Assembly: GCA_965649765.1 (NCBI GenBank)
Contig: OZ287750.1
Span: 87,854,001 to 87,918,000 of the forward strand
Direction: 5' to 3'
DNA: 64,000 bases
Source of the DNA: Bispira polyomma
Lineage: Eukaryota
Each line of letters begins with the position of its first letter. Position 1 is the stretch's first letter. Made by a program: the position numbers and the translations under genes. Shown piece by piece: positions 2,871 to 64,000 of this stretch. The notes below the pieces were generated by a model that saw nothing but the letters and a program-made list of their open reading frames with translations, had not been told where the DNA came from and made no database searches.

Positions 2871-3070
2871 ATGGGAATCCCTGATCCAGAATCTCGAGAC
2901 ACCCCTAATCCGCCTAGTTATAATGAGATCTATAACATATCCGCTGAGGGACTCCGCCAAGGTGGAGGAGGCAATAGTGATGGGGGGGAGTCTGGCCCGA
3001 GTTGTTCATATAGTACAGATAAGTTTAATGACTTAGAAGCAATAGATGGAGAAACAGAAAAGAAAGAAAG
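2871..3070 (+). CDS. DEG/ENaC coding exon 1 (cytoplasmic N-terminus with PPSY)
   Basis: ATG at 2871 follows a pyrimidine-rich acceptor (AG 2854-2855). Donor AG|gtaact at 3071, phase 2, matches the next exon. Confidence 0.7.
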
Positions 3071-12000: not shown

Positions 12001-12994
12001 TTCCACAAAAAATGTCTAATTCTATTTTAACCACCTGTCATTCCATTAAAAGAACTGCTTACCCCCTCCCCCTCTCCCTAAGGTGTTAATATAACACAGG
12101 AACTACAGGTGCCAACTAAACTTAGACAGTCTTCAGTAGTGCATGCTCCATCCCTTCACCAAACTGCATGTACATCAGTTCAATAGTTGAATTGTATTTT
12201 TAAAAAGAAATAATCATTGAGATAACCTCATCCTTTGGAGTGAATTGTGTGTATGTGTGGATGTGCAGATCGGGTTGTAGACACTATGGAGATACTTTGC
12301 TGTTTACAAAAGTATCTCGACAATGATGAATCAATCAGACATAAAGTTGTAACCTTTTCGACACCCAAAAGAACACTATTCCCACTAACTGAAGATTTTT
12401 TAGGGTAATGGTTACAGATAGTTGGAGTCACTCAAATATGCACCACAGAATACTTCCGGCATTTAATAACATCCTCATATATAAGTTTTTTAACAAGTCT
12501 GCTGTATGAAGAATTTTCTAATATAAAGATCATAAGGAAAGATCATAAGGTTATTTTTGGGTTGCTTGTGATCAAATGGCTTAATTGCAACAAACTGTGT
12601 CTAATTTGTGTTATATCAGGTACACAACCTGGAACCCAAACATGGCAAATGCAACGACTCTGTGAGACTAGACTACTTCGAGGAGTACACAGTAACAAAT
12701 TGTGAGGCTACCTGTAAACTGATGTTTGTACTAGAAAAGTGTCACTGCAAGGATGTGTACATGCCAGGTATAATTTAAATTATTTTTATGTCAATTTAAA
12801 CTTGTATAATTGCTTGAGGAAACATGTAGTTGGTCAAGATTTCTGAACTGTATTTTACCAAAAAATTAGGGGTATTTACTTAGAGCAAATGGTTGTTGCT
12901 GGAGTAGAGGGTAGGGGAGATCTTTTTGAAAAGAAGTAGAGAGTGTGGAAACACATATTCCAGGATATTTAAATTAAAATAGAAGAACTGAGAT

Positions 12995-13029
<35 letters not shown>

Positions 13030-16000
13030 GTGTCATAATTTCTTGTTAACTTAATTTAATGCATAGTACCTTACTTAATCTGTGGTGACCTTATCCCCCC
13101 TTCAGTTAACGTAAACTGTACGCAGAAAGATTAGAATTTTATTACCCTAGTCACTAATAAACTATTTTACCGCAATCTGTTACTGTGTTAAATATCGTGT
13201 CAATTTATGGACTGAAGAACTGAATGCATAGATTGTAATAATTTGTACATTCTGATTTTTGTTTTATTAATATATTCTTTATTCCTTGTTGATTTAATTT
13301 AATGCATAGTATGTAAAACTTTGTACATTCTGATTTTTGGTTTATTAATCTGTTCTTTATTCCTTGTTAACTTAATTTAATGCATAGTATGTAAAACTTT
13401 GTACATTCTGATTTTTGTTTTAATAATGTGTTCTTTATTCTTTGTTAACTTAAATTAATGCATAGTATGTAAAACTTTGTACATTCTCATTAGTATTTTT
13501 TAAACGTCTCTTACCACCTGTACATACCGTCATAGTCTGAACACCACATTAGAGCTTGTATAAAGTCTGAATAAATTTCTTACCATAATAACGATTCTAT
13601 AAGATTTATACTCATTGTATTGTATTTGTATTGTATTTTGGATTTTAATGCCTTATTTATGTAAGGCATCTTCTAAAGCACAACAACAGAATCAATTAAT
13701 TAATCAAGAGAAATCCAAAAGACATAGCATGGTTGCTGGGATGGATGTGGGGGTGTACAGGGTGGGAACTAAGGGGGGTAATCGAGTTTGTAGCAATCAG
13801 TTTTAATTTTTTTACTTAAACTCAGAAAGTGTTTCTGGTGATCTAAGCTAAAATGTAAGACTATTCCTTAATATATCGATTGGAAAAACTTTATATGGAG
13901 CCCTCTTGTGGAATTTAACATAAAATACAGAAAGTCTATTTCCTCTCTTGACGTTACTGAAGGAAATATGACTGGCAATGTAGGAGGACTGTTGAGAAAC
14001 AACAGCTTTGCATGGTCAATACATGGAAATTTCTCATTTGTATCATTTCTAGGTCCCGCGCCTGTGTGTACTTTACTACAGTACCAAGACTGTTTAGTAG
14101 AAACTTTGGGTAAGTGGAAACACGTAATTAACCCTTAAAAGGCCTTCATTTGTATGGTAGCTTTTAGGTTTTATTACCTGAGCTGGTATTCACAAATATT
14201 TTTAGTCTTACATGTTTATCTCAACTAATTTGATTGATTGAAAATATTGTTTTGAAGAATTTGATTGGCTGATACATTGTAAGAATGTTTGTGAATATGG
14301 CTCCTGGGCTGGTATTCACTGAAAAGCTTATGTCTAGAGATTGTCCTAAATCCAGCACAAAAGTACACTAGATCTAAGACGATGTTTCGGCTTAGCCCTT
14401 TTGCGAATACCATCTTGTAAAAATATTCAGCATCTCTGCTCTTCTGGGTGAATAATTTACTTTGGAATACGGATCAACTGGATTAAAATCAAAGGTACAG
14501 GCAGACACCCAATGGATTGGTAGACAACTTTAAAAGATGAGCCAAGCCATAAGGCAGGATGTAGTACATAACCACGAAAATACCTAGTATGTGTGGGCAA
14601 TTTTAAAAAATGACACTTATAAAATGAAAAGTGTTCTTAACCCAACAAGGTTTTACATACTTTAAAACAATTTTATTAAAAAAATAATAGTTCATTGGTG
14701 TAACTTATAATTTATTTATTTGGGTCTAACGGCGATTTTAGCAGTATTGGTCATATCTCGACAGCCAGATTTGTTAGTTGAAGAAGTAACCAGTGCTGAA
14801 GCATTGCGAAGGACTAGCCTACAGCAAGTAAAATTGCTTTCTATTTTGCTTCTGCTTTCAGAAATCTTCACTCAGATGAAGGAAGTCTGTGAATGTCCAG
14901 TTCCCTGTGACAGTTTGATGTTTGAACCTGTAGTGTCATACGCAGCTACTTCCAACTTTGACATCCTCGCTCTGCTGAGAAAGAATAACACTGAATACTT
15001 AGCAGAGCAGTACCTCAACTCAAGGGAGATTAACCAGAAGGTACATTCAACCCTTTGGACCCCTATGTTTTCAACTAGTTGTGTACAACATTTGTTACTC
15101 CCAGAACCCATGACTGTCGACAAGCAGTCGACACCCCCCCCCCCCCCAAAAAAAAAAAAAAAAAAAAAATGTTATTATTTTCCTTTTGTTACTTTCGATA
15201 GGATATTGCTAATACAGCAGAATTCTTCTTTTCAAAAATTATATGGATGGCCATTTTATTAAATGTCAGAAATATTCTGTGGTGTGTGTATTGGTGGGTG
15301 ATCACAGCTATCTCTAGTCTATTACCCAAAAGATTTTCTGTAGTTCCTGGCAAAATTTTTCTGTTGGTTTGAAAATGGTGTATTTTATGGTCTGCCTACA
15401 TTTTAGCTAATCGTTATTGTTTTCATCCTGTCGGTGCAAATGGGTGGCTAGGTGTCGGCTGCCAAGTTTGAAACCATGAGGTCAAGAAAGCTCATATTTG
15501 GTACAACTTTTCCTTCTGGTAGGTAACTGATTGGGTGTTATTGTCCATGGTCTGGCGACTAGTAAGCGTCATGTAATGGTCTAGTGGACTTGTGGGTAAC
15601 ACATTCACTTAAGAATGCAATGGGCCACTAAGGGCTTGTGGTTACAAGTGTTCATTTGTTATCTCTCGACAAATTGATTTTGTATAATAAGGTACAGTAA
15701 AAGATTTGTTAGCTGAATATCTATTAGCCAAATATTCAAATTTATGAACATATTTCGACTCACCCAAGTTTAATTCTCCCTGTTGTTTTAAACTAAATTC
15801 CTCTTGTAATGTTCTGTTTATAGATTTAATCTTGCTCAATCTTTATATATGTCAAAGGTCAACCAAGAAATTGTCAAAGAAGACAGGGGGATGATCGGGA
15901 GCTTTGTTGAGAGTGTAGGGGAACTCAATGTGGTCGTAGAAGGGATTAAGTCCTCTCTTGATCAACTCCGGACTTTACTCACAGCTCAGCATGATGTAAT

Positions 16001-19000
16001 GCAACAGCGGATCAACTTCCACTTGGAGCATGGATTGGAGAAAGTGAGATTTTTATTGGAGGACAACATCCTTAGGTGAGAGGTTTCTTCTATTTCTTAA
16101 TGTCGTGATCACTGTACTTGTGTATGACCAGTAAGTGGCACGTTTTAAAATTGATAATTACTAATATTTTAAAATTAACTGAAGCCCAGCTAGAATGCTG
16201 CAAGGCCACAAATACAATAAGTTTTTTAAGGTATATATACAAAACTTTACAGTCAGTGGCACAAATACACATATTTGCAGTCATTGGCAAAAATACATCA
16301 CTTTACAGTCAGTAGCTGAAAAGACACCATTTTACAGACCGTGGCACAATCCATCCCAGTCAATATGCAAAATAATAGTCCATTAGCAGAAAAGGTTTGT
16401 GACCATCAGAGTTCAGTCATGACCAGCAGATAAATGTTAACTTGGAAAAACATGATGATACAGATGTGCTTTGAGGTTTTTTCTTCTGAAGTCTGTCATT
16501 TTTGTCTCAGTACAAAAACAGGCAGGGAGACTATTCCACTCAGTAGGTGCTGCAAAAATCAGAGCTAGAGAGATGATTTTCTCTGGTGCGATTGCTGTGA
16601 GATAACTGCTGTACATGGACATTGACCTTACATTTTATAGAGAACTCAATCGATAGCCAATGAACTGGCCATTTGGCCACAATGTTCAGAGGATCGCTAC
16701 AAAATGATATCTATGTTTCATATTTTGGTCATTTGTGATGCTATCACATCACCTAAATTCACAAATAAGGTACCGAATAAAAGCTTATTATCTACTGAAT
16801 AAGTAAAATACAGAGGCAGCATGCCATAATTGTATTTCCTATGAAGGAATCACAAAAAAAAACACAACTTGCACCTTTCTTTTGAATTATCAGAACTATC
16901 AAACTTACATAGTTAACTTCTAAGATAACATGCCTAGTCAGATTCTTTTATTTTATATTTGATGATCAATAAGGCTGCTCTGCATCTGCAATTTCTTTTG
17001 AAAATGTGTCGAAATATACTTCAGCCTTTATAAACTATAGACATTTCAATATCTGGTGTAGTTAGATATGCTAGTTGGAGGTATTTAAGTAAATTAAACA
17101 TTTGAGGACATTGTTCATTGGCTGGAAGTTGATGAACAAGTGTATTCGCCTGTGTCATGTCACAGCAGTTGACAGTATAAAAATATTATTGTATAGCCTC
17201 CCTTAGCACACAGAAATAAAATATATTTGGTATTTCAATTGTCATAAAAAAAACTTTTTTTTGCATTTGTGAAATAATTAGCCGTTGCGAAAGTGTCATT
17301 TGTGAGAGTAGGATAGAATTACTCTCCATCGGTGGCGAAGGGGTTAATAAATACTGCTACACCAAAAGTCGACACCACTTTTTCTTTCTTTCAGACAGTG
17401 GAAGAGTTACTTTGAGAAGAACTTCGACCATGTGCTGTTTGATTACAAAGGTCTGCCTCGCCTGCTAAAGCAGTCGATACAGGACGCTAACGGGACGGTG
17501 TCCTTTGAGAACAGGGACCATCGACTGCTTGTCACAGTTCCTTCATCTGCCGCGGTAATAAAATTTAAACGAATATGGGCCAACTAATTCTTCATGTGAA
17601 CTATACCACATTCATTTTAATACTGTTGTTAGATTCCCAGTGCTAACACACTCGCCTCCAGCCTCTCGGTCAGGGCCGCGGTGGCCTAGTGGTTAGCAAG
17701 CATTGCGCTTCACAATCACTGGTCTTTCACCTCTGGGCGGCATGAGTTCGAATTGCTTCAATGCCTATGTGGGAAAGGTGGTAGTTCCTTACTGTAGGCC
17801 ACTGGTTTCAGTGCATAACATTGATCAACTGTATGCAGTGTTTCCTCCAGCATTTCCAACTACCCGTCCCAATATAACCTAAACAGGTACATGAGTGGAC
17901 GTTAAATATCCAAATTCAAATTCAAATCCAACCTCTCGGCCAGGACTTTAAATGGGAAAGTTGGCAGTTACTTGTCGGTGGTCACTGGTTTAGAGAGTAG
18001 AATCTTGTTTTGTCATGTGGGTGGTACTTTGCTCTACTTTAGTGGTGCCCCAACATTAATAACCAAATCTTGCCGTGACAATCTACCTTTGTGGCCCTTG
18101 TGGGTAATATATTCCTTTAAGAATGACTTAGGAATAACTTTGCGACCAGGGTACATGCAAGTTCATAGGGGCTCAGATAATGACTTAGACGATTTAAAAT
18201 TGGTGGTTCTCTGTTAATAGGTGCCATCCCCAGGGCAATGGAAGAACTTGACAAATGATGTCATCCCCATGCCTGCGTTTTTAGATATGGGTAATGTCAG
18301 TTACTGGGGCTGGTTGGCTGTACTTGGGCCGTCAAGAAAAGGTTGTTCAATCAGTGCTTTGATCACACCAGACAAAGGCATATATATATATATACACACA
18401 CAATGCACAAAAACACAGGGAAAACAGATATATCTCTGAATGCAAAAGCAAAAATTGAGGCTACAATCAAAATCAAAGTTTCTGTCACAGTTTGTGCCCA
18501 GCCCTGTCATTTATATCAATATCAAATTATAAATCTGAATATGGATGAAATTTGACAAACGTTGTTATTACCAACGTACAATTGTAGGACTCTCCGAGTG
18601 TGCGTATATTATACAAGGATAGCCTTTTAAAAAAGCAGGTCTGAGGAAGTTGAAGACTGCTTAATGTAAGTCTATTATGCACTGACACTTTTGCCAGATT
18701 ATTCTAGTTCCGATTGACATTCTGGTGGGCCTTAGTAGTAACCATTTTGCTTAGCGATTAAAAAATATAACATTAACCACGATATAACAACATATATGTT
18801 CTCATAAATATTGTCAATAAATCTACACCCTCTACATGGTTTATCTAAGACCTGTCATAAAACATGGCAGCCCGCAGCTGAAGCTCACATTAGGAGATCT
18901 TTGACCTAAAAAATAAAGGATATAAAGAAGAGTATACAGTCATGTGCATTTTATCTTCCTGAGTCATATAATTTTTAATATGCATGTTATGTTGTACATG

Positions 19001-22000
19001 CACAAAGGTTCTTTCACTTACAATTGTTATATTTGATGTATGCATTTTTTTTATTTATTGATGGCTTTATATGTTTCTGTAACCATATTAAGACCACCTC
19101 AAAAACAAAAATAAATATCGATAGTTCTTCACATTTTCAACCAGTCTTTAATACATCACACTTGTGAAACGTCACAGCTACAATGTAAACAAGGAATTGC
19201 TGCCATAGAAAAAAAATTAAATTCATATTTAGAAAGCACTAAAAAATCACACTTGGTTTAATGTCCGTGCAAAAATAAAGATATTTTTGATACCTTTTCA
19301 TGGGTGCCAGGTAACCCATTTTATATCCCATATTTCACGTCAAAACATTGTATTTCACGGCCGAGTGGAAAATAAAATTAAATTCATCTCATGTTTAATT
19401 TTTTATTGTATTGTGTAGCTGTGGAGAAGACTGGGTATCATCAGCAGTACCAAGCAATTCATTCAAACTATGGAGAATAAACTCACGTATGAGGACCAAC
19501 ATTTCGTCATCACCAAAGCCAGTTTTAACTACCATTATGATCGCTTCTACAAATCCCCAGAGCTCTTAGGTAATTTTTTATTGTGCATTTAACATGCCTT
19601 ATTGCTGCTAGGCATCTTCTGAAGGGCAGCAACAGAATCAGTTACCCAATAGTGTAGTCCACAAACATAGCCAGGTCAAAAGGAAGGATGTGGGGGTGTG
19701 CAGGAAGGAATTAAGGGGGATAAGTGAGCTTGAAGAGATAGTGTTTCTAGTGATGTGAGCTCAACTGGGAGCCTGTTCTATAACACGGGGCTGCTATGGA
19801 GAAAGCTTTGAATCCAGCGTTCTTGGTTGGTTCAACACAGGAAACAGAAAGTCTATTACTTCTGTTATATTTATATTAAGTTCATTGTATAGGTGACACA
19901 CCTACATACAGTCTATTGGTCTCCTATAGTCTAGTGATCAGAGACTGGTTATCAGAAGACCTGACGTTCCACTCCTGCTAATTGCTAGTTTCAGTGGCTG
20001 GTTAACATTCTTCGACCAGATGAGAACACGCCTTTGCCTAGTGGCTCGGATTGGCACTTAAAATAGCAGTGTCATTCTGAAAACTCATCCATACTGGAAT
20101 TTGAAAATGATGTAAAACCCAATTTTATAGAGATAAATCAGTTGCTACTAATCCTGTGTCAAATTATTTCTGTGTAAATTATATCAACAACATTTTTCAT
20201 TGGGTTTTCTGCTGACACATTGATAAGTAGTGGAGTGAGTATTATATAAAATTCTAAAGTCCTAGGTTAAATGGTTACTATTCAACAAAAAAAAAATCAT
20301 AATATTGATAAAAACGGGAAAAAGTCAACAACAGCTGATCAAGTGGACAGCTATTAAGGGAATGCATCATTAAACAAATATGCTTTTAAATCTGCGACAG
20401 AAGGAATGTATGGAATAAGCTGTCCTGATGCAATAACGTAAACTATTCCACAGCGTAGGAACATCAAATACATTGAATGCTTTGATATGAGTTTCCTGGA
20501 CATAATAATATAAACCTCAAGGAATTTATTTTGGGGATTTTCTCCTCTGTGTCCTGTATTAATTACATTTGTAGTATTTTAAGTATGGATCGAACTATGC
20601 AGCCAAGTCAGAGTCAACAAACGTATTACACAATTGTAGCAGACTTTGCTAAGTTTTGGCTTTGGCCTTTTGTGAATCGCCATTATATGACTGAAAATGG
20701 CCAACACCAAACCTTTCATTTACTTCAAAAGCAAATTTATTACATTTCACAATTTGTAGTGCTGACATATTTTTGTACATATTATGTGTGAGGAATGAGT
20801 ATAATTATGTGGAAACATTTGAATATCAAAGGTTATGGTTGGATCCGAAATCCCTAGTAACATTCTCCGAAGGACTCAAATATGCTGTTTTTGGAACCAT
20901 TTAAATGTGGGGAAAATGTATTATCCTGCATTTTTCCAAAGGTTAACGGGGCGTACCATTTGAGATCCAATATTGCTGGGGCTTGTAAATCAAAGCCTTC
21001 GTTAGGCTAACGAATACGTTTGGTCTTGATTAAGGATTAGTTCACAAAGTGTTGAGTAAATTGAAGCCTGAGTTAGTTTACTGTTGATTAACTTTGTTCG
21101 TGAAACCCCCTAAATTGAACGACACCTCAGACCCTGTTATTTTGTATTTGTTAAACCATATATTCACCAAAAATCAAAATAAATAATAGTACAAACTTCT
21201 AAAAAGCAAGGCAATGGCAATGATGCAATCATTTTCGCTTCTATGTCTAACATAACCCATAAAAATCAATACAAATATATATACTATAATCACACTACAT
21301 GATGCCATACAACCACATCAGTTAGACTTTTTGTTTGGGCTAAATGAACCAAAACCTAACCAATGCTTTTCATTTATCCACAGCATTGTTTGGTTACTGC
21401 CTGGCAGTTTTGTCGTTACATGTTCGTTAGTTGACATTTTAACGAAGGTTTTGATTTACAGGGCCCAGGTCGATTTTTTCGTGATATAATTAAAGTTCAA
21501 ATATAAGTTGTCTAAGTTCTAGCGTTAAATGGTGACTATTATTTTTGGTTAAATCTTTTTATGAGTTATGTATATATTTGTTGACATTGTCCACATGATG
21601 AATCGCAAACCGGATGATGCTAAAATGTGAACACCTAAAATCAGGCCTTTATGGCATATTTGTGCCTGTTTTTCCAACTACATGTAACACCACTGTCATA
21701 CACATATCTGGCGTTTGCTGTGATATAACTTTTCACATATATTGTCCTATATTATGACATTTACGAACCTCTACTGACACCACACTAATACTCTTAATAA
21801 TTTTTGTATTTACATTAAAACGTTTAATGTTTTTTATTGCTCTACTACAATTTATCTAATGTCCTGGTCACACCTACACGTTCTAGAGCCACGTTTGTGT
21901 CACGTTGTGTTGATTTTAGAAATGTTTTGAAACGTAGTAGAAAGTGAGGATCCCTAGTGCATTCGTTCCATGACATTGATTAACAGATGGTATCGTTCTG

Positions 22001-25000
22001 GGAACGTCTCCGTTTCATTTTTTACGTGTACTGTTTCAAACTGTTTGAAACAGTACAGTCACAGCTCTTGTTTCTCCCCATTTCACTGCTTGTCCCCAAA
22101 CGTTTCAGAAAGTAGCATAGACGTATCAGTAAGTAGCTCCACGTACTAGTAGGTAGCGAGGAAGAAGCAGAAGGCACCAGTTAGTAAAAGTCAGTAGCTC
22201 TACCTAGTAGTAGGTAGTGATATTCTACCAGTAAAGGGTCCGTTTTTTTCCCCGCTTCGTGTGTATAAGTGCTAACATCGTCACGAAACATCACAAAAAC
22301 GTCACAATCGACTCCTCCTTTATCAAAATGACGTCACTTTGACACTAATCTACCACGTTTCCAGTTTATATTGCTTTACTACGTTGAGGGATGTTAGCAC
22401 GTGTAGGTGTGACCGGGCCATTAGGGAGCTGAGAGAGAACAATTAGTACCAAGGGAAAGCGCTATATAAATGCATCACATTTACAGTCTCAGATGGTATT
22501 GATTTGTTTTCTCTTGTGATACATTTTATAAAGTATGTATTTCATGGGTATTATTTCCTTTATATCCAGTCTGTAATCGTATCTTGTATTATATATCTCT
22601 CTGTACAGCGACTCGTATGAGTACCCTGGGTAAAGAGGACTATAAGGACCAACATAAGGAACTACTGCATTCTGTCAATGATGTCAAGTTTGGTAAGTTT
22701 CAAAAATTCAGGCAAAAGTAAGAAAAAAACCGATTTGTGAGCAATTTAACATAATATCAATCAGTTTTGATGATTGAATGTTAATAAAATAAGTATTAAT
22801 TTTTGTATTAAATGTATGTATTGTTCACCTACTTTTGATTAAGCCATAAAAATGAAGCTCTGTATACAGTAAGGAAGTTTAGGACAATTTTGTATATATC
22901 TAGAAAAAGATGAAAATTTCAGATTTGCAATTCTGTTTATCTTTGTGAATGATATGCTATGCTGCTTACACACAATTGTAAATGTGTCTTACAACAGAAA
23001 CTTTATAACCTTTGCAAAGGAAATTATGTGTTCACACGTGATGTATTGTTTAGTTGGTATATTTCTTTCATTTCAGCATTATACAAACAAAAAACCAGAA
23101 CCAACTCATATTACATTTGGTAGAGTGTTAGGGTTGGCAGAGGTACACTTTTGTGAACGCTATACTGTGTGACTGTATATTTTATAATAGGTTTATGGTT
23201 CTTACTACCCTAACATAATTGCAATGTGTTTTTGGTTCAGCATTTTAGTCTGGTATAATCTGGTATAATTATCCAGTCTTGGTCTATTTGCTCTTTGGCT
23301 TATTAGCAGGATTAAACAATAACTAATGAATCAATTCTAATATTTGTGGAGGGTTAGGGCATGGACCAAGAACAAAAATACACATAGAAACTGTAATACT
23401 ATTGTATGTTTATTTACTCGAAAGCCAGAGGAAACAGTAAAATGCACACTAATTTGCAAGATGATTACCGACTGCTGATCTATTTCTAACTCACTTGGGA
23501 TATTCACAAAATTACCTCAGTTACCTTTACAGTTCACTATATTTCACATTTGTACTTACTATTGCACAAATTTAGGTGTATATATCCACATAATGCTCAG
23601 GGTGCATAAAAATACTTATTGTTATCTATAATTTAAGGAATATTTGCCCCCTTTTACCTACACACTACTGCGAAATGTGTTTATTGGTCAAATATGTTAT
23701 TGAACTCCCATTTTGATGTGGTATAGTCAGATAGCTGACTTTCAAAGGTTTAGGTTTGTGCTTTGTGATTATTGTACCCCATCGAGGAGGTTTGTGCTAT
23801 ACTAAGTGCTCTTCTTGTAATATTGTTTTAGGAATCATTGACCTTCTGAATGTAATCAACGATTTCTCAGAAAACAATACCTTCGATACGGAGTTGTACG
23901 AAATAGGAGAGAACAAGTTTATCAGCAAGGTGGAGGAATTCAGGGAAAATTTGTACAGGTGACAGACATAAGAGAACTTTTGAAACCCTTTTGAAAACTT
24001 ATTTGGTTGTATATTTTATGGTGTATTCTATTCAAATGTCTACTAAGTGCATATGTCTACCTTCTTCTGGTATTCAGAGTGGTGATTAACCCTTTCCTGA
24101 CTGTAACAGTCAACAGCATCAGTTACTACCATTCCCCTAACTCAAGGGGGCCGCCGTGGCCTAGTGGTTAGCAAGCATTGCACTTCACAATCACTGGCCT
24201 CTCACCTCTGGGCGGCGTGAGTTCAAATCCTGTCGATGCCTATGTGGGAAAGGTGGTAGTTCCTTACTGTAGGCCGCTGGTTTCAGTGCAGAACCTTGAT
24301 CAACTGTATGCAATGTTTCTTCCAGCATTTCCAACTACCCATCCCAATATAACCTGAACAGGTACTAGAGTAGACGTTAAATATCCCAATTCAAATTCCC
24401 CTAACTCAAGAGGTAGGCTTGAGGATGACACCATTTATCAATGTCCTCAATATTCTTTAACTTGCCACTGAGGGGGGGGGGGGGGGGTAGGACCCATTGA
24501 CAGACGACCATTATCTGAAGTAGTCTTTCCAGCCACTAGGTAAACGTGTGTACAAATTTTGCAAAAGGATGTTATCCAACCAATGAACCTAGCAGCCGGT
24601 ACCTGTAGTAAAACATGGTGCCTTTTGATTATGAGACCAGCACCCTGACCACTGGGCCACGAGGGACCAGAAGTAAAAGTTAATTCTAGGAATGGTGTCT
24701 GTCAGTATACAATCAATAACACCCCCAAAATTATCATGTTGCTTTTCTTCAGTCCGGTGTATTTGGAATGTGTTAATATTACAGAATTCCTTGTTATACA
24801 ATTAAGTCATTATGAAATGCGAGGACTCATCGGTGGTGTAAATTTGATAAGTGGTTTAAAAGCAACTCAACTGGTTACAAAGTTTCAATGTGTTTATAGC
24901 ACATTGGTGGTATATGGGCAAAATACACTCATCCGCTACACCTGCACTCTTGAATTCAAATCTAAATGCTAGCATGAATACGGAAAAAGCCTGCGGTGAA

Positions 25001-28000
25001 GTTGCTGAAGGCAAATACAAAAAAACAAACAATCGTGTATTGTTTTCCTCTACCATTAAACTGCCAGTGGTGATATAATACAAACTAAAGCACAGGCAGT
25101 TTTGCCTTTGCTATTTGCGGCTTTTAGTCCTTGTTTAAATTTAAGTTCCCTGTTTATCAGAATAAGAACCAGAACGTACAATAAGCTTGATGCTATTTTA
25201 TAAAAGTTATTATTCAAAGGTATATTTTGTTCCTTTAATTTGTGGTCAGATACAATACACCATATATTAAAACTTAGGAATTCCACAAATAATTACACTT
25301 TTTTCCGAAAAGTTTTGTTGTCAGTTCCAGGTTTGGTGACTTTGTAAGGGCTCATGTTATTGGCTAAGTTACCTTCAAAATCACATTCATAATTAGTAGT
25401 ACTTCCATCACACAGACATGGACACTGTTTACGCAGCACATTTTAAAGTCATTATACTTACTGTATTTTTATCAGGACCTGTCTGATATTGTTTTTATTC
25501 TGAAAAGGGCATCACTATCTTTGAAAAGCACGCCGCCATCTTCATGGATTGGTTTGAAGCAAACGATCCATCCAAACAGAGGAGTGCCAAATGGGCCTGA
25601 GTATACAGTAGCCATATCAACATTAGTGTATTTCACACAGCGCGCTGGTGTCTTTTTGTAAAGACAACTCTTAGTCTAACTTTTCCTGATATTTCAAGGG
25701 CTAATTAATCTTTTCATGACTGACACACTACAGCCAACCATCACCAGTAACTGTGATTACTCCAAGGTTCTTAAGCTTACCACCGGGAATAGGACTTAAG
25801 GGCCTTACAAACCGAGGACTACACGACACTACACTTCACTACAGGGGACGACACATCACTGTACATTTTATATTCTGTATAATGTACATCTAAGCAGTCA
25901 TGAGGGGAGATCAATTAATCAGCAAAGCCATTTGTGCAGAAATAATATAGAAACACCTAACGATACAACGTTTTTTTAGGGATTTCTCCAAGTTAAATTG
26001 CAATGTCTTGCAGTATAGTGTAGTATCTAAGCCAATATATAGAGTCAGTACATAGTTCCTTATTTCTATTTTTTATATTGGCATTTCATGCTGTGTAGTT
26101 GGTGGTCTGTAAGGCCCTTTAAGCACAGTAAGTCGCCATTTGAAGTAGTCATCCCGACCACTATGTACCTAGGAGCCCTTAAACGTTCCCGAGCAAGAGT
26201 GTTACCCAATAGGCAATGACTAGATGACCCGAGAAAAGTCAAAGACAAAATTGTATTTTGCCTGATTTTATCTGATATTTTCTTTATGCCAGCACTAAAC
26301 TCAGATACTTGTTTTACAGCTATGACAAACTGATTGTTGAACTGCCGACCAATGCCATAGATGAGGTCATACTCAACTTCAAATTTGACAACAAGTCGCA
26401 GTTTGACATTTTCAGCAACATCCTGAGGAAAATCAACACCATCAATGCTTCTATGATGACCTCGTCCCAGGATTACTGGAGTCACGCACAGTCCATCACA
26501 GGTGGAGTAGAGTTTTAACCAGTATTAGATCGAAGACCTTCTAATCTAAGCCTTAGCCATGTTGTATGACGGGTCTAAGATGAACCATTTACGGGGTGTT
26601 GATTTAATTATAATATAGTCATGAAAACATATATCTTGTTTTATCGTGGTTAATGTTATATTTGTGTCATATGTATATTTCTTTCTATAGGTGGACTGAT
26701 GGAAGTTTTTTTTTATAAGAAACATGAAAGAATTAATTGATATGGAAAATAGAACATTTTATGTTGAAAAAGCACCTTTTTTTCTTTTGTGATTCTTGTG
26801 TCTGCTGAGCTTGGCTAATTACAAAGGGTGTGAAGAGGTTCGCCTCCAACATAGTTCTGATACAAAGCTGAATTGATTTAATTTTTTGAGTCTACTAATT
26901 TATTCATGGGGTTTTCCCCATCATTTCAATCCTCTAATTGGCTGTACCTATATGAATACTTCACCTAAATTGTTTGTGTTGTTATTACCAAAAAGCTCTT
27001 ATTAAGCACATTGTGATAGGTTTCACCAATTTCACAATAAAGCGACCTTCACCTTCCTCCGACCTGCCTTTTTTGAATGCTATTCTCATTAGTACATGTA
27101 TTATTTGATTACAACTACTTCATAGCATATACAGAATGGTGCCGGATATCGAACATGTATATGCAAAATGTTTTCGGATTTTTCGGAAAGGTTTTCAACA
27201 TCAATTTTACATTCACTATTTTACACAGTAAACTAAGCAAGGGTACAGAATGTCTTAAATATAGACATTCAACTATGATTTGGTACAATAATCTTGATTT
27301 TAAATGCTATATTATTAATACAATTTTAAAGATGATTTGTTGTAGTATCAACTCTGTACTTCTTCTTTATTTTTTCACTTGTTTGTTTTTTTCGCATCCA
27401 AAGTTCATCATTCTAAATAATAATCCCAGAAAAGACCATATACATTCATGATATATATTTCAGAGCTCTCCTTGAGATATTTGGCCAATGACAACAATGT
27501 CACGAAAACCATGGTGGCGGAGGCTGTGACATCCCAGGCAGTCAGAGAATCGTTTTACTCCCTGCATTTGTTCTTTAACGATGTCCAGCTTTACCTAAGA
27601 GGACTCAGGAATGAACTGAGATCCTTAAAGGTATACAAGGCGGTGGGGTGGGTGACATACACTGTCAGAGGACCTGGGTTTGATCCCAGATTGTTATATA
27701 AGTTATGATGAATTATTGACTGTTGGTTACTACAAATTATGAAAATGCATGTGTGTATAAAAAAAATCAATACAATAATGCCAGACTGACGTTAATGACT
27801 ATACTACAGATAATAGAGGGAAAATTAGTACAGCTTTCAAATAAACATGTTTTTGTAATGTAAAGGGGAACAAAATGTAAACAGATGTTGACGGTAAAAA
27901 GAAATGAAAGGAATTTAGATCACAATAAGGTTGACTAAAACTTTCAGACAAGAACCTGTTGATTATAACTCATATTTGTATTCAGATTCATACGCCGCAC

Positions 28001-31000
28001 ATATATTTACCTTCATCTGGTACTTAAAGAGCTAATTAACCCTTTCCTGACTGTATCAGTCAACTGCATCAGTTACTGTCAATCCATTAACTAAAGAGAG
28101 AGGCTTTACGATGACCATTTATCAATGTCCCAAAGTATCTTTCGCCTGCCACTGGGGATAGGGCCTAGTGTCAGAGGACCCCCAGTTTAAGTGGTTATCC
28201 GAGCCACAAGAATATAACAATATGTTAAGACAACACGTTCATGAACAACACCCCATCATGGATTACTCCCCACACTACCTAACCACCCCTCATTAGCACC
28301 CATCAAACTCCTTTTATTTATGTAGTGATCACACTGTCCACATTCTCGGGAATGTTCTAGTCCTGTTCTGGGAATCTGTGTGAACTGGAGTAAACGTGTA
28401 ATATCTGGGCATAAACTGGGCTTAAATGGGATAGATCAGCAAGAACAGGAGGCAGAGCCGGAAATCTTGAACATGTTCAAAAGCTCAATGGGTGGTCGGC
28501 TTTGAAAGCATATCTTGAGAAAACTGGAAAAAAGGGCATAAACAGGGCTTAAACTTCTCAGAACTTGTGTAAACGGGGCCTAAACTGCTTAGAACTAGTG
28601 TGATCTGGCCAGAACTGGAGTAAATTGATATAATCTGAAGCACTCGTTACAGGAACATGTGATGAACTGCTTAGATCTAGTTAGCTCTGGGCATAAATTT
28701 TCATAAACTGGTGAGATCTGGTCAAAACTGGGCATATCCTGGGCATAGACGGGGCTAAACAGGTCATAAAGGGGGATGCAAAAATATGCAAATGAACATG
28801 ATCTTGCCATTCTCTCCCGAATAGCCAAGTTCTAATGATCGGGAGTAAACTGGTATAAACGTGGCAAGAAATTGGACAATGTGACTGACACATTACTTGG
28901 TTACTATTGTCTTGTTTGCCTTAGTGATTAGGGAGTAGTTCACATCATAGTTAGGGGGAAGTTGGTCTGGCGAATGGATGGTACTCCTGCTGATGCTGCT
29001 AGGTTAATTGCTGGCAAAACATCATTGGGCAAGACGTGATGATGAACTATCTATGTTTGAGGACACATGATTGGTACATTTATTCGGTTGCTGCGCTTTA
29101 TAAAAATGTATGAATCAATTGTATTGTATGGTATTTTTTTAAATTTTAAAGCGCCTTATTGTTTCGAGGCATCTTCCAAAGCACAACCACAGAATCGGTT
29201 AAGCAATAGAGGAGTCCACAAACATAGTCAAGGACGAACAGAAGGATGTAGGGGTGTACAGGCAGGGATCTAAGAAAAGGAGGGTAGGCTTTTTTTGAAG
29301 AATTAGGTTGTAAGCTTTTTCCTAATACCATAAAGTGTTTTAAGTGATCTAAGCTCAATAGGGAGACTATTGCATAACATAGGGGCAGCCAATAAAAAAA
29401 AACCTCTAGAACCTGCCCAATTAGTAGGTTTAACAGAGGAAAAATCTTTCCCCCTTTAAGGTTACTGAAAGAAATTTGAGCAATTCTAAACGTAAACTCA
29501 GTTTAGCAACCTTTACTTAAGTTAACCTTAAACTTGTAAGGTGGCCTTAAATTCACATGTGGAGTCATATATATTTTAGATTTAACATATAAAATAAACT
29601 AACATACACCACTGCTAGTCTGTGTGTGTTACACAAGGTCAAATTAGAATAGGTAAGGCATCAATAAGGTCAAACTGATATAGCAGGGAGAGACACTGAA
29701 ACAAAATACAATGATGAATGGAAATGTAAACGGTGTTAAAAATATAAAAATGCAATGAAAATACTTACATAGTTCTATGTTTTGGCTTGTTTCAGATTAG
29801 CTATGGCAATGCCTGGAGATCCATGATAAACATTCCTTATACAAGGTTGTTTTATCAGCAGATTAAACAAGACCTTCAGGACTTTGAAGTGTATCCGGAT
29901 AAAGTCTTACACGGGCGATACAATCCAGATATCGAATACAGCTACCCAACACTGTGGTACAAGCTCCTAAATAAGTGGTTCGTGAGTCGGGAAGCTGTGG
30001 AAAAGCTCTCAGGTAACCTTGGTAACATATATGACTTGGTATTTTAAGTGTAGTTTCCCTTGAACATCATTTCAACACGATTTATGGGTCTTATCATGAC
30101 AGCCAGTTTTTTTGGTGGGACAAATGAGAGCAGGATAGTTCTGTTCTGAAAAACACTGGTCTTCAGCAGGAACCCACATAGACATCAAGGCCAACATTCA
30201 ATCCTTGATGGTAGGAGTCTTAGAATTCTTCCTCTAGCTGTAGCCATTTCGTATTTGTATTCAAATTGTAAAGTGTATTTATCTACCTTTGTGTATGATA
30301 TTCAAAGTGCTAAATGACACTTTTTATGACTGCTAAAGCACAGCCAACCAGCACTGGTAGCTGTTTTACTGAAAATAGTGGCTTGAGGATGGCACCTCTC
30401 TGATTTTGCATACAGTGGTCAATATGTATAGTAATTAATCTTAATGTGTGTCCTGTCAACATACATTATTTAAATATTGATTAGTTGACAGGTATCTTCA
30501 AAATTTTGCCTTGGAATGTTCAGAAACACAAGAAAATAAAAATAATTACAATCTTTTTTTTTTGTATTGACTAAAGCCACTAATGGGTGGCCTTTCTCCC
30601 AGAATTCATAGCAAACATGCGCAGTGCTGTCACACATCGTAACTGTGGAAAGACCTATTTATCAGGTCCTTTAATCTGTTGACTGCAGATAGGAGCCACT
30701 GCCAGAGGACCACCATTTTAAGTTGTTATCGGAGCTACTTTATGTGCCTGTTATCTTTGGGAGTGCCAGGCTGGGATTGAGTCCAGGTCCTCTGTGTTTC
30801 TAAGTAAGTGTGCTACCTACTATGACACAGTTGCCAATTAGATGACATCATATACATCAGTCTTTATATCTTGTTGTTTGTTCAGTTGAACAATTAAGAA
30901 GAGCAGTGAATGGGGATTTTCATGACAAAACCTTGGACATGTTCCTCAACCAGACGGAACGGGAGTTTGAGGTTCTATTGGTAGGTTTGTATTAGAGACT

Positions 31001-33563
31001 TTTAACCCCTTCATGCCCGTACAAGTCGATAGCAAAGTATATTTGTCAGAACCCTGTTTGCTTACCAGCAGACAATACCCCAATATTATTATTTCACTTG
31101 AACGCTTTCCCTCCCTATATTGTTAGCTAGCAGCGCACAGCCTTTCTTACTCCCAGAACATATGTTTCTCGTCAAGCAGTCGACACCCCCAAAAATATTA
31201 TACTTTTTTTCAATTCCTCGCAATAGGAAATTGTTAGCATAGCAGAATCCCCTTTTAAGAAAATGATACACAAGGCTATTATTGAATGCCGGATGTATTC
31301 TGTGGTGTGTTTTTTAGTGACTTCAGATATCTGTAACGTATTCCCTAAAAAATGTCTTTCAGTTTCCACCAATAGTTTTTTCTTAGGGTCGGGAGGGTTA
31401 AGGGAAAAACAAATCTGTTATAGATTAAACTGTAATAATAATAGCTTCTTAATTCTCAATGTGTACACAAAATGCAATTACTAAACTAGCATGTTTCTGG
31501 TGTAACTATTTGGTTAATAGAGATACTTTTATTTGCTGGAATTGCACCAATATATGGTGATGAAGCTAGTGTTTTTGGTATTGTTTTGCTGTCTATGTCC
31601 CTATAGTATAATTATGTTATTTCTGGTCTGAAATCCCCATAAGAATAAAGTGTATTTAATAATGTATAAGCGGGCCTTATGCCGTGGAAATTCAAACAAA
31701 CTTGTTTTCTTGTTGGTTTTTGTATTAGGGCATTATAGATGATGCTTACCTCAAGGCGGAGCTAGATGAACCTTTTCTGGTGGCTTTTGATAAATACAAG
31801 GCATCCTTGGATGGTTTCCTGAGTGAAAGTGTGGTTAACTCAAAGTTTTACAGGTTGGTTAATATTCTATTGTATTTTTGATATTTTATTAGTTGGGTTC
31901 ATGTTATGTGTAACAGCTTAGGTCATATTGACAACTGCCAGATTTCATGGTAGAGGAAACCATTGCAGGAGGACTGTGAACCACCGGCCAACAACAAGTA
32001 CCTGTCAAACTTTCCCCACACGAAAGAATTTAAATTTAGTTTTAGGTAGCTTTCAACAGCTAAGGCCATATCGCGGTAGTCAGATACAATGATGGAAGAA
32101 ATCAGTGCTGAAGCATTAAAAACCACCGACCTACAGCACGTACCTGTCAAACTTTCCCACATAGAGGAACAAACATGATTAAATATGACACTGGTGAGAG
32201 GCCAGTGATTATGAAACAAATGCTTGCAACTACTAGACCACCGCAGCCCCTAATAGTATGTTGTAGAAATAACCCTTGAGATCGAACTTATGTTCTTGAA
32301 AAACATATGTAATGCCTTCAAAGATTGGTTGCAATTGACCCATCCAAACTGAAGGGTGTCACATTTGCCTCAGTATATAGTCGCCATATCAACCTTAGTG
32401 TATTTTAGACTGTGTGCTCTTTTTAAAAAGATAACCCTTGTTTTTTCCTGCAGAGAGAATTTCATGCGCGTTGACATTTTCCTTCAAGAATTGAGATATG
32501 AGGAAATCAGACAGCAGAAAGCGTATGACATCATCAAGTTATTGGGTATTGTATTGTATTCAAACTTATTCTGACCACATTTATGTACCTTTATCTGGTA
32601 CCCAATATGCTCATTGGCTTTATTTTAGCTGCTAACTCCCTAACCTGCCCAAATTAACTCTAATTCACCCAACTGTAGATGACCAGCTGTCAACCTCCAC
32701 AATGATCTTTAGCCTGTCACTGGGGATAAGACCCAATAACAGAAGCACCACCATTTTTAAAGTAGTCATCCAAGCCATTATGTATCTGCCTGTACATGGT
32801 TACCCAAAGCTGGGATCGAACCCAAGTCATCTGTGCTTTTAAGCAGGCGTGTTACCAACTGAGACACAGTTGCAGATAAAGGTAGGTTTAATAGAGCTTA
32901 ATGTTGCTTTGAACACTTTTGTGTCTTGTTAGTTGAACATTTCACTCGGTGGAGAAAATTGGAATACACAACCAAATATTTGGCATACAAACATACTTGG
33001 CCTTCACCTTATATGAGTTTGATAATTACTCGTAAATATTTAGACTTCAAGTTTGAGTCTTTATTCGAAGTTATTATTCGAATATTAACTCAGATTTAAA
33101 CATATAACTCAGTTTTAGGCCTTAATGCTTAATTTCTATAGTACTAGTAGTAAAACTTGTATTTATTTTAAATATTTTAGCATATCAGCGATCTTGTCGT
33201 TTTGGGGTTTTTCAAATTATTGCAACATGCTTCATAACAGTAATTATAATAAAAAACACCCCTATGGTTCTACCTTTTCCTGAAGACTGTTCACCGAGGA
33301 AAGAGAAACTCCTCTTTCTTTGAAAGATGAAAAATTTGCAAAAAAGGAAATGTTAGTCACTCTGTATTTCTGTCTTTGTAGGTGACATTGGCGGATCTAT
33401 GGGGCTGTTCCTGGGCGCCAGTGTGCTTTCAGTCATCGAGTTTATCGATGTGTTTGTGCATCACGGCTTTCAGTCGTTTTACCGGAAAAATACCAAAGAT
33501 AAGATGGCAAAAAAGAAGTCCTCAGGAGAAAGTGGTAGGGGCCCTAGAGAAAAAACAGAATGA
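2871..33563 (+). CDS. DEG/ENaC (ASIC-like) amiloride-sensitive channel subunit with giant knuckle insertion, whole spliced gene, ~1043 aa, 21 coding exons
   Basis: Exons: 2871-3070, 4002-4112, 4949-5116, 6544-6705, 10098-10222, 10856-11037, 12620-12767, 14053-14109, 14862-15040, 15858-16075, 17395-17554, 19419-19569, 22609-22692, 23832-23958, 26320-26501, 27464-27630, 29796-30012, 30886-30980, 31729-31853, 32454-32545, 33382-33563 (3132 nt, one open frame). Family motifs: TSLHG, TM1, FPAITLCN, GQCYTFN, GLRLQLNIEQ, Cys-rich thumb, CPVPC, GDIGGSMGLFLGAS. Confidence 0.93.
4002..4112 (+). CDS. DEG/ENaC exon 2 (pre-TM1 HG motif)
   Basis: ttgcag|...|gtgagt; encodes DSEPKKSLSKVFYEFTQNTSLHGARQITEPQPFIFR. 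Confidence 0.93.
4949..5116 (+). CDS. DEG/ENaC exon 3 (TM1, beta1-beta2)
   Basis: RLLWFLVFLGSGVLLVLQMGLSVQYYLSWPVSVDLKIIYNDSIQFPAITLCNKNAFR; GT-AG bounded. Confidence 0.95.
5208..6070. repeat. G-rich ~21-22 bp minisatellite (ggggttggtctggtgatgagaa)
   Basis: About 30 degenerate copies interspersed with a longer variant ggtccctggttacactcctagtta. Confidence 0.95.
6544..6705 (+). CDS. DEG/ENaC exon 4 (finger)
   Basis: tttcag|...|gtgac, phase 2-2; TSKAFEKGYYFLLHDLY...IGHTIEELVI. Confidence 0.88.
7400..8363 (+). mobile_element. 5'-truncated L2-clade LINE (family A), frameshifted RT C-terminal region plus 3' UTR
   Basis: IESWMNNSKLKPNLDKTEFLLIG, RLDYYNSLLYG, SFLVAAPAGWNNL...FRKKLKTHLY, then the same tail as 893-1172. 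Other fragments at ~3770-3890(+), 16400-16560(-) and 56820-57030(-). Confidence 0.9.
8364..9557. repeat. 67-bp tandem satellite, ~18 copies, with 470-bp higher-order repeat
   Basis: Unit caccataatgacaacttcttcctttgtacaccgatagtctatcatagcactgacctattaaaccaca; the variant pattern of 8431-8900 recurs at 8901-9370. Confidence 0.97.
10098..10222 (+). CDS. DEG/ENaC exon 5
   Basis: SCEWEGNPCNHGDFVQQLTDYGQCYTFNSG, containing the family GxCYTFN motif. Confidence 0.95.
10856..11037 (+). CDS. DEG/ENaC exon 6 (palm/beta-ball)
   Basis: GSGGGLRLQLNIEQYEY...GLKILIH...HGVAVPPG; donor gtaagc. Confidence 0.95.
12620..12767 (+). CDS. DEG/ENaC exon 7 (thumb)
   Basis: VHNLEPKHGKC...YTVTNCEATCKLMFVLEKCHCKDVYMP. 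Confidence 0.95.
13240..13490. repeat. ~77-bp AT-rich tandem repeat (~3 copies)
   Basis: Recurring ttaatgcatagtatgtaaaactttgtacattctgatttttg; a partial copy also at ~13045-13070. Confidence 0.85.
13615..13960 (-). mobile_element. L2-like LINE 3' end (family B, (caata)n tail)
   Basis: Reverse complement encodes a decayed NSL...LRSPETLSEF.KKLKT motif followed by the 3' UTR. Copies at ~11360-11765(+), 19585-19860(-), 29118-29470(-), 36690-36800(-) and 41000-41290(+). Confidence 0.7.
14053..14109 (+). CDS. DEG/ENaC exon 8 (thumb)
   Basis: GPAPVCTLLQYQDCLVETL; tttctag|...|gtaagt. Confidence 0.92.
14862..15040 (+). CDS. DEG/ENaC exon 9 (end of thumb, beta10, start of knuckle)
   Basis: EIFTQMKEVCECPVPCDSLMFEPVVSYA...YLNSREINQK. 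Confidence 0.93.
15858..16075 (+). CDS. DEG/ENaC exon 10 (knuckle insertion)
   Basis: Phase 0-2; VNQEIVKEDRGMIG...LLEDNIL, heptad-like. Confidence 0.85.
17395..17554 (+). CDS. DEG/ENaC exon 11 (knuckle insertion)
   Basis: Strong polypyrimidine acceptor, phase 2-0; QWKSYFEKNFDHVLF...VPSSAA. Confidence 0.85.
17674..17926 (+). mobile_element. tRNA-derived SINE, full length, nested in an older SINE
   Basis: A-box tggcctagtgg, B-box gagttcgaa, (tcaaat)n tail; ~17-bp TSD tccagcctctcggtcag / tccaacctctcggccag. Confidence 0.88.
19419..19569 (+). CDS. DEG/ENaC exon 12 (knuckle insertion)
   Basis: Phase 0-1; LWRRLGIISSTKQFIQTMENKLTY...FYKSPELL. Confidence 0.85.
21860..22420. mobile_element. PIF/Harbinger-like MITE (~560 bp)
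   Basis: TIRs tgtcctggtcacacctacacgt / acgtgtaggtgtgaccgggcca with TAA/TTA flanks. Confidence 0.75.
22609..22692 (+). CDS. DEG/ENaC exon 13 (knuckle insertion)
   Basis: Phase 1-1, donor gtaagt; ATRMSTLGKEDYKDQHKELLHSVNDVKF. Confidence 0.8.
23832..23958 (+). CDS. DEG/ENaC exon 14 (knuckle insertion)
   Basis: Phase 1-2; GIIDLLNVINDFSENNTF...FRENLY. Confidence 0.85.
24147..24395 (+). mobile_element. tRNA-derived SINE, same family as 17674-17926
   Basis: Perfect 15-bp TSD ttcccctaactcaag at 24132-24146 and 24396-24410. Confidence 0.92.
26320..26501 (+). CDS. DEG/ENaC exon 15 (knuckle insertion)
   Basis: Phase 2-1; SYDKLIVELPTNAIDEVILNF...HAQSIT. Confidence 0.85.
27464..27630 (+). CDS. DEG/ENaC exon 16 (knuckle insertion)
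   Basis: Phase 1-0; ELSLRYLANDNNVTK...LRNELRSLK. Confidence 0.85.
28321..28893. mobile_element. Probable Harbinger-like MITE (~570 bp)
   Basis: Imperfect TIRs tcacactgtccacattct / agaaattggacaatgtga; internal short repeats (aaactggg). Confidence 0.5.
29796..30012 (+). CDS. DEG/ENaC exon 17 (knuckle insertion)
   Basis: Phase 0-1; ISYGNAWRSMINIPY...EAVEKLS. Confidence 0.85.
30886..30980 (+). CDS. DEG/ENaC exon 18 (knuckle insertion)
   Basis: Phase 1-0; VEQLRRAVNGDFHDKTLDMFLNQTEREFEVLL. Confidence 0.83.
31006..31397. mobile_element. piggyBac-like non-autonomous element
   Basis: TTAA|CCC...GGG|TTAA ends, with weak TIRs; internal segment (ttactcccagaac...aagcagtcgacaccccc) also found at ~15095-15290. 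Confidence 0.5.
31729..31853 (+). CDS. DEG/ENaC exon 19 (end of knuckle insertion)
   Basis: Phase 0-2; GIIDDAYLKAELDEPF...SESVVNSKFY. Confidence 0.87.
32454..32545 (+). CDS. DEG/ENaC exon 20 (beta11-beta12)
   Basis: RENFMRVDIFLQELRYEEIRQQKAYDIIKLL; compare ASIC [24 protein letters not shown] (recalled from memory). Confidence 0.95.
33382..33563 (+). CDS. DEG/ENaC exon 21 (TM2, GAS selectivity filter, C-tail)
   Basis: GDIGGSMGLFLGASVLSVIEFIDVF...REKTE*, TGA at 33561-33563. The true frame differs from the ORF-track frame. Confidence 0.96.
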
Positions 33564-63600: not shown

Positions 63601-64000
63601 CTGACAAAAAAAAAAAAATTTTTAAAATGCCTGTTAAACTAGTATGTATAGATTATCTAACGAGAACACTAGAGCCTTGTGGACTTGCCTACCACCTCTG
63701 CATTCAAGGGTTTGAATCAAATATATGTGGGAAAGTTAGTAATAGACTTGCTGAAAACCAGTGGTTTGAAGAGCTCCAAATCCTAACTGATTACCCTGCT
63801 CTGATTTCTTGCACCTGTTCACTGTCATATGACACAACGTTTGATGTAGGTGACTTTAAGCCCAAACTAAACTAAATCTAAGGAAAGCACCACATAAGTC
63901 TCTCCCCACAGGATTGTAATTAAACATATTTTACTGAGTTATAGCAAGGTTTACTGTAAAATAGGTAGTTACATGTCAGAGTTACCTCATGCTATTATAT

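What the first reader, a model, noticed from the sequence alone, without database searches (positions are those of the whole stretch)
15858..31853. DEG/ENaC channel with a ~510-aa Cys-free helical domain inserted in the knuckle (a possible stalked channel)
Seen: ten extra exons (1526 nt) splice in frame between beta10 (FEPVVSYA, after CPVPC) and beta11 (RENFMRVDIF), roughly doubling the subunit to ~1043 aa. The insert has no cysteine, shows amphipathic or heptad-like runs (e.g. VGELNVVVEGIKSSLDQLRTLL; VQLYLRGLRNELRSLK), and carries six N-glycosylation sequons (NGT, NNT, NKS, NAS, NVT, NQT). Established: in ASIC1/ENaC this interval is the two-short-helix knuckle at the apex of the trimer near the 3-fold axis, and family size variation usually falls in the finger instead. 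Inference: three inserts could form a tall helical bundle or coiled-coil stalk above the pore. That stalk could act as a matrix tether for mechanogating or as a large ligand-binding module, i.e. an uncharacterised channel subfamily. I cannot tell whether homologues have already been described.
Basis: partly seen in the sequence, partly recalled or inferred. Interest (0 to 1): 0.87.

Follow-up and report, generated by a model that had tools for sequence, protein, structure and literature searches.

The report
Sodium channel carrying a helical tower
This invertebrate ENaC/ASIC-family ion channel carries an extra 500-residue domain, predicted to be a helical tower about 13-15 nm long on top of each subunit; the design is shared by segmented worms, ribbon worms, molluscs and brachiopods, probably by the nematode orphan channel DEL-10, and was not described in the papers searched.

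Summary
Confirmed. A 21-exon DEG/ENaC gene (1043 aa; AG/GT sites, no stop) has ten exons (1526 nt) adding about 510 Cys-free residues with six sequons between knuckle helices alpha6 and alpha7. No RNA exists for this genome. However, own-genome paralogues and genes of Lineus, Owenia, Capitella, Dimorphilus and Haliotis carry the same domain inside one exon. The spliced window insert fits the family profile end to end (291 bits; shuffles at most 4). The profile hits 275 clusters, all named ones spiralian and functionally uncharacterised. Platynereis and Lingula transcripts join it to the core. AlphaFold of a Lineus homologue (pLDDT 95) gives two stacked four-helix bundles threaded by an 84-residue helix. 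It has no Pfam, PDB-sequence or Foldseek match. The insert is under purifying selection (dN/dS 0.08-0.29). C. elegans DEL-10, silent in oocytes, has a shorter insert at the same site with similar motifs, compared by eye only. The core is ASIC/BASIC-clade but lacks H73 and K211. Best guess: a tall binding head gating or docking the channel (0.42); matrix tether 0.27. The trimer and function are untested. No paper describing the domain was found, and the scan had not noted it elsewhere in this genome.

The parts
2871..3070 (+). exon 1, ATG and cytosolic N-terminus (aa 1-67; no homology support, least certain exon)
4002..4112 (+). exon 2, pre-TM1 re-entrant loop with HG motif
4949..5116 (+). exon 3, TM1, wrist (Val at the ASIC H73 site), FPAITLCN
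   Evidence: (best PDB match BASIC/ASIC5, E 4e-8)
6544..6705 (+). exon 4, short finger
10098..10222 (+). exon 5, beta-ball/palm
   Evidence: ASIC2, E 1e-6
10856..11037 (+). exon 6, palm/beta-ball
   Evidence: (PF00858, E 1e-10)
12620..12767 (+). exon 7, Cys-rich thumb
14053..14109 (+). exon 8, thumb
14862..15040 (+). exon 9, thumb end, beta10, knuckle alpha6 and first helix of the tower
15858..16075 (+). exon 10, ascending long helix (aa 445-517; part of the 84-residue helix)
17395..17554 (+). exon 11, distal four-helix bundle, helices 1-2; sequon N549
19419..19569 (+). exon 12, distal bundle helix 2 and conserved loop (YD motif)
22609..22692 (+). exon 13, distal bundle helix 3
23832..23958 (+). 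exon 14, distal bundle helices 3-4; sequon N663
26320..26501 (+). exon 15, descending long helix; sequons N715, N733
27464..27630 (+). exon 16, proximal bundle with the family signature Tyr-Leu...Lys-Thr (Y757, K766); sequon N763
29796..30012 (+). exon 17, proximal bundle end (W814, Y827) and basal lobe
30886..30980 (+). exon 18, basal lobe (N-G-D motif); sequon N901
31729..31853 (+). exon 19, return helix and knuckle alpha7
32454..32545 (+). exon 20, beta11-beta12 and start of TM2 (Gly at the degenerin site)
33382..33563 (+). exon 21, TM2 with GAS filter, short C-tail, stop

Best explanation
SHOWN: an intact clade-A (ASIC/BASIC-like) DEG/ENaC subunit whose knuckle loop between alpha6 and alpha7 is replaced by a conserved domain of about 520 residues. 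PREDICTED (on a Lineus homologue): a proximal four-helix stalk plus a distal four-helix head, joined by continuous helices of 84 and 75 residues, about 13-15 nm long. INFERRED: three such rods stand on the apex of the trimer. Their conserved, glycosylated head (Arg/His/Tyr/Trp/Asp cluster) is a binding module for a ligand or protein partner held about 20 nm from the membrane. Binding moves the rigid rod and its basal lobe against the neighbouring finger/thumb and so opens the Na+ pore, or docks the channel to the partner. Protons are probably not the trigger.
For: Fold: (head 87-288 is a four-helix bundle; the proximal bundle matches another, rmsd 3.3-4.1 A over about 195 residues). The head is the best-conserved part between paralogue subgroups (50-55% against 33-50% for stalk and base) and holds most conserved polar and aromatic residues. 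Purifying selection: dN/dS 0.24-0.29 in paralogue pairs, core 0.19-0.20. Heads look exchangeable: Capitella P0171 matches only stalk segments. Tandem birth and death of paralogues, as in receptor families (one copy with stops). H73 and K211 are absent in all full-length members aligned. DEL-10 gave no current in a pH screen in oocytes (PMC10424705). Knuckle alpha6 lines the peptide pocket in FaNaC (PMC11026163).
Against: No ligand, current or expression data exist. Resemblance to chemoreceptor sensor bundles (Z 9-12) lies within the background for helical bundles and below de novo designed bundles. The knuckle is nearly static during FaNaC gating, a poor place for a lever. Head conservation could equally reflect trimer contacts. 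No diversifying selection in the head. The window gene itself has lost several consensus head residues. DEL-10 silence may be a trafficking or missing-subunit problem, as its authors say.
Confidence: 0.42

Rival explanations
1. Mechanical tether: the glycosylated rods reach into cuticle, mucus or matrix and pull on the palm (force-from-filament gating).
For: Mean 7.6 sequons per insert, with three conserved sites (82, 60 and 60 of 116 rows). One paralogue and its orthologue carry a Thr-rich mucin-like segment of about 300-380 aa inside the insert. Knuckle N-glycans mediate shear sensing in alpha-ENaC (PMC6955349). Long rigid helices suit force transfer.
Against: Many divergent tandem paralogues per genome fit recognition better than a conserved mechanosensor (inference). 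Two of the three conserved sequon sites are not clearly kept in the window gene. No force data.
Confidence: 0.27
2. Non-gating scaffold: the tower controls assembly, partner choice, adhesion or localisation (for example spanning a cleft), in a subunit that conducts only as a heteromer or not at all.
For: The knuckle is static in known gating. DEL-10 homomers are silent. Some members have degraded pore ends (P0071).
Against: HG, GAS and the TM2 acidic residues are intact in the window gene and most members, so the pore is maintained.
Confidence: 0.24
3. The insert is tolerated bulk without function.
For: Only 12-20% identity to the window across phyla.
Against: Length and fold are kept in four phyla; Y757, K766 and Y827 equivalents are over 90% conserved; dN/dS 0.08-0.29.
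Confidence: 0.04
4. Gene-model error: exons 10-19 belong to another gene or are skipped in the main transcript.
For: No RNA for this genome.
Against: In homologues beta10 and the whole insert lie in one exon. Platynereis and Lingula transcript ORFs run thumb-insert-TM2. Exon 9 ends in phase 0 and exon 20 starts in phase 2, so skipping all ten exons shifts the frame.
Confidence: 0.03

Closest known systems
ASIC1 / BASIC (ASIC5), DEG/ENaC clade A
   Same: Core fold and topology (Lineus homologue to chicken ASIC1: E 5e-64, Foldseek E 4e-21, VIA Z 32); HG, thumb cysteines, GAS filter.
   Different: About 553 residues instead of about 35 between the last thumb Cys and beta11; no H73 or K211; short finger.
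C. elegans DEL-10 (T28D9.7, NP_495302.3) and its nematode orthologues
   Same: Large helical-looking insert at the same site (about 383 residues by my count from the PMC9822975 supplement). It has a Trp..Tyr-Leu-x6-Lys-Thr motif at the family's Tyr-to-Lys spacing, a similar run-in to beta11, and Cys at the degenerin site like the mollusc and nemertean members. Two Tubulanus members are auto-named del-10-like. The nearest Atlas clusters are nematode ASC proteins of 866 and 973 aa, one named del-10.
   Different: Insert shorter by about 170 residues, with an acidic run and three Cys; the head motifs are not recognisable; homology judged by eye, not scored. Papers treat DEL-10 as an orphan (one calls it worm-specific, PMC5196487) and do not discuss the insert.
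FaNaC/WaNaC peptide-gated channels (clade B)
   Same: Spiralian DEG/ENaCs; knuckle alpha6 helps form the ligand pocket (PMC11026163).
   Different: More distant core (E 8e-38 and 2e-22); no knuckle insert.
alpha-ENaC knuckle glycan tether; MEC-4/MEC-10
   Same: Precedent for an extracellular tether at the knuckle (PMC6955349).
   Different: A single glycan, or finger-region domains, not a 500-residue helical rod; other clade.
Four-helix-bundle sensor domains of bacterial chemoreceptors (Tar, PcaY, Adeh_2942)
   Same: Up-down four-helix head, Z 9-12, rmsd 2.6-4.1 A.
   Different: 4-9% identity, scores within background for bundles; no evidence of homology.

Membership tests
DEG/ENaC superfamily (PF00858) | Two TM helices around a palm/thumb/finger/beta-ball/knuckle ectodomain | tested here: met
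DEG/ENaC superfamily (PF00858) | HG motif, Cys-rich thumb, G-x-S filter | tested here: met
DEG/ENaC superfamily (PF00858) | Trimeric, amiloride-sensitive cation current | not testable with these tools
   needs expression
ASIC (groups A/B) | Wrist His73 (PMC10507113, PMC9949801) | tested here: not met
   Val in the window gene; no His in any full-length member aligned
ASIC (groups A/B) | Palm Lys211 | tested here: not met
   Thr in the window gene; not Lys at that column in homologues
ASIC (groups A/B) | Proton-gated current | not testable with these tools
   none
DEG/ENaC clade A (ASIC/BASIC side) | Core closer to ASIC/BASIC than to ENaC/FaNaC | tested here: met
   similarity ranking only, no tree with references:
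Spiralian knuckle-tower subfamily (defined here) | Full-length match to the insert profile between beta10 and beta11 | tested here: met
   291 bits, positions 2-511; groups with own-genome paralogues, support 0.96-1.0
DEL-10 clade | Large insert between beta10 and beta11 | tested here: met
DEL-10 clade | Sequence homology of the insert | tested here: inconclusive
   Motif seen by eye; the strict pattern occurs in 21 of 116 family rows and 0.13% of random 375-mers, but was chosen after seeing DEL-10 and the window gene fits only the loose form. No nematode among named profile hits.
DEL-10 clade | Monophyly of the cores | not tested
FaNaC/WaNaC | Clade B core | tested here: not met

The most novel reading that the evidence does not exclude
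An old protostome DEG/ENaC branch (spiralians plus nematode DEL-10) gates through a new mechanism: a 13-15 nm helical tower on the knuckle senses a ligand, partner cell or matrix far above the membrane and drives the pore. Orphan DEL-10 would then be its model member, with exchangeable heads.
Probability: 0.35. Interest if true: 0.88.

Novelty: new variant of a known kind. Interest (0 to 1): 0.76.

Why it matters
Known DEG/ENaC gating inputs act on the finger, thumb or wrist; the knuckle is treated as a small static cap. A conserved, well-folded 500-residue tower there doubles the subunit and offers a protein-built version of the long-sought extracellular tether or a remote sensor. Published phylogenies contain such sequences but trim the insert out of their alignments. 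It gives a concrete, testable reason why C. elegans DEL-10 is large and silent. A mutant allele (ok1705, listed in PMC6010301) and Platynereis transcripts already exist, so the test is within reach.

Tried and rejected
RNA support: none on record; the three runs are DNA. Two extra candidate exons (18221-18290, 25476-25600) break the frame or the collinearity and were rejected. Pfam, PDB-sequence, Foldseek PDB, viral and Atlas searches of the insert gave nothing significant; weak hits to spike HR1, olfactomedin and leucine zippers are generic coiled-coil scores. Word-index protein searches were nearly blind to this family. A pure 7-residue coiled coil was not supported: only the first 48 residues of the long helix and one stalk helix show a period near 3.5, the rest 3.3-3.7. 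Diversifying selection on the head was not found. An introner origin of the ten new introns was not supported: they share only internal repeats. It was only translated and compared inside local scripts with sequences already held. All structure results are therefore for the Lineus homologue. DEL-10 was read by eye from a paper supplement and not typed into a tool.

Full report
Observation. Rebuilding the gene from the window gives 21 exons from 2871 to 33563 with canonical splice sites and one open frame of 1043 aa. Exon 9 ends in phase 0 and exon 20 begins in phase 2, so the ten exons cannot be skipped as a block. No RNA run is on record. Two DNA runs of one study match the assembly over 26200-32000 in their longest pieces; one may be the assembly's own sample.

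Independent proof of the insert. The window lies in a 1.04-Gb animal genome with about a hundred PF00858 matches. Single-exon searches found paralogues on another chromosome. Five intact genes near C8:55.3 Mb and two near C8:7.1 Mb carry the region as one uninterrupted frame of about 1.5 kb or more, mostly collinear with window aa 433-953 at 22-31% identity. Their profile hits 275 protein clusters, 197 at E up to 1e-10. Named members are from nemerteans (Lineus, Tubulanus), annelids (Capitella, Dimorphilus, Owenia), a brachiopod (Lingula) and molluscs (Haliotis, Ruditapes, Littorina, Lottia, Argonauta and others); full-length ones run 900-1060 aa and are labelled uncharacterised or ASIC-like. 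In Lineus, Owenia, Capitella and Haliotis one exon runs from the thumb end to the junction before beta11; in Dimorphilus the exon is longer still. The spliced window insert matches a 116-sequence profile from position 2 to 511 of 511, 291 bits against at most 4.1 for shuffles, with no large gap at any junction. Transcript-derived ORFs of Platynereis and Lingula in the supplement of PMC10507113 run through thumb, insert and TM2. The gene model is therefore secure even without RNA.

Structure. AlphaFold2 of the Lineus insert gave pLDDT 95 and pTM 0.87, almost all helix, with helices of 84, 75 and 48 residues. The full subunit gave pLDDT 89 and pTM 0.69: an ASIC core, beta10, alpha6, the insert, alpha7, beta11 (Foldseek ASIC1 E 4e-21; Z 32). 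Structural alignment splits the insert into a distal four-helix bundle (model 87-288; window aa about 506-706) and a proximal bundle formed by both ends, plus a basal lobe that is short in molluscs. At 1.5 A per residue the long helix spans 126 A, up to about 150 A with its kinked continuation. No solved, viral or Atlas structure matches the domain as a whole. Best partial matches are designed bundles (Z 14-16) and sensor domains of chemoreceptors (Z 9-12), which is background for bundles.

Constraint. Across phyla the insert is 12-20% identical to the window against mostly 34-43% and 48-63% for the two core parts, yet length and key residues persist. dN/dS is 0.24-0.29 in recent paralogue pairs (core 0.19-0.20) and 0.08 where measurable between species. 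The head is the most conserved part between subgroups, and three sequon positions recur in 60-82 of 116 sequences. One paralogue and its orthologue carry a fast-evolving Thr-rich segment in the basal lobe. A second subfamily (Capitella P0171; probably a C14 gene here and Platynereis comp420047) keeps stalk motifs but has a different, Cys-containing middle.

DEL-10. Two members are auto-named del-10-like, and the Atlas ranks nematode clusters of 866 and 973 aa first. The DEL-10 sequence printed in the supplement of PMC9822975 has about 383 residues between the last thumb cysteine and beta11, with the family's Tyr-Leu-x6-Lys-Thr signature and a similar ending (motif statistics, post hoc). I could not score it, so homology is likely (about 0.7) but not shown. 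DEL-10 gave no current in oocytes (PMC10424705) and its stimulus is unknown (PMC9822975).

Mechanism. The pore motifs are intact, and the ASIC proton determinants H73 and K211 are absent (definitions in PMC10507113 and PMC9949801). I favour a remote binding head on a rigid stalk (0.42): conserved polar and aromatic head residues, apparently exchangeable heads, and receptor-like gene turnover. A matrix tether (0.27) has the alpha-ENaC knuckle-glycan precedent (PMC6955349) and the mucin-like variant. A non-gating scaffold (0.24) fits the static knuckle of FaNaC (PMC11026163). All coupling steps are inferred.

Novelty. Nine successful literature searches found no description of this domain or clade. 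The phylogenies that hold such sequences trim their alignments to about 455 columns. The library lacks most subscription papers, and predicted models of public members probably exist elsewhere, so prior notice cannot be excluded. The scan's notes list finger-borne lectin and LDLa modules in other channels of this genome but not this one. Verdict: a real, old, undescribed structural variant of a known channel family; interest 0.76.

Limits. The spliced window protein was not submitted to any search or fold tool; exons were searched by reference and the joined form was used only in local scripts. The trimer was not modelled.

Noticed in passing
window 15041-31728 (introns 9-18): Ten introns split what is one exon in other phyla and in most paralogues, while core introns sit at ancestral positions. 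Paralogue L017 has about five introns in the same exon at different positions, pointing to repeated independent intron gain.
   Followed up: partly
L016:4351-7290 and P0001 (L047): Paralogue with a Thr/Ser/Pro-rich (37%) mucin-like segment of about 380 aa inside the basal lobe of the insert; 37% identical between species against 75% for the helices.
   Followed up: partly
G000:C8:55.26-55.43 Mb and C8:7.03-7.12 Mb: Tandem clusters of knuckle-tower channels (about six and about four); L024 is broken by frameshifts and stops and lies beside an intronless cytochrome P450.
   Followed up: partly
L025 (G000:C14:18.77 Mb), P0171: Second knuckle-insert subfamily with a Cys-containing, acidic middle; P0171 has an RKKR furin-like site inside the insert.
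   Followed up: partly
PMC10507113 supplement file 10: Other DEG/ENaCs with shorter (about 200 aa) knuckle expansions: Platynereis comp412166 and Saccoglossus Sakowv30002567m; relation untested.
   Followed up: no
window 34620-36125 (-) and 62167-63621 (-): Two near-duplicate, apparently intronless EF-hand protein genes (about 500-aa frames) 27.5 kb apart.
   Followed up: no
window 42600-46300: Decayed retroelement-like fragments (RT- and recombinase-like pieces by eye; no Pfam hit).
   Followed up: no
window 8364-9558 and 5492-6071: 67-bp minisatellite (17.8 copies, 470-bp higher-order period) in intron 4 and 23-bp array (25 copies) in intron 3.
   Followed up: no
P0169 (L052): The Owenia model joins a tower channel to a CBM39/GH16 glucan-binding protein after TM2; probably two genes merged by annotation.
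   Followed up: no
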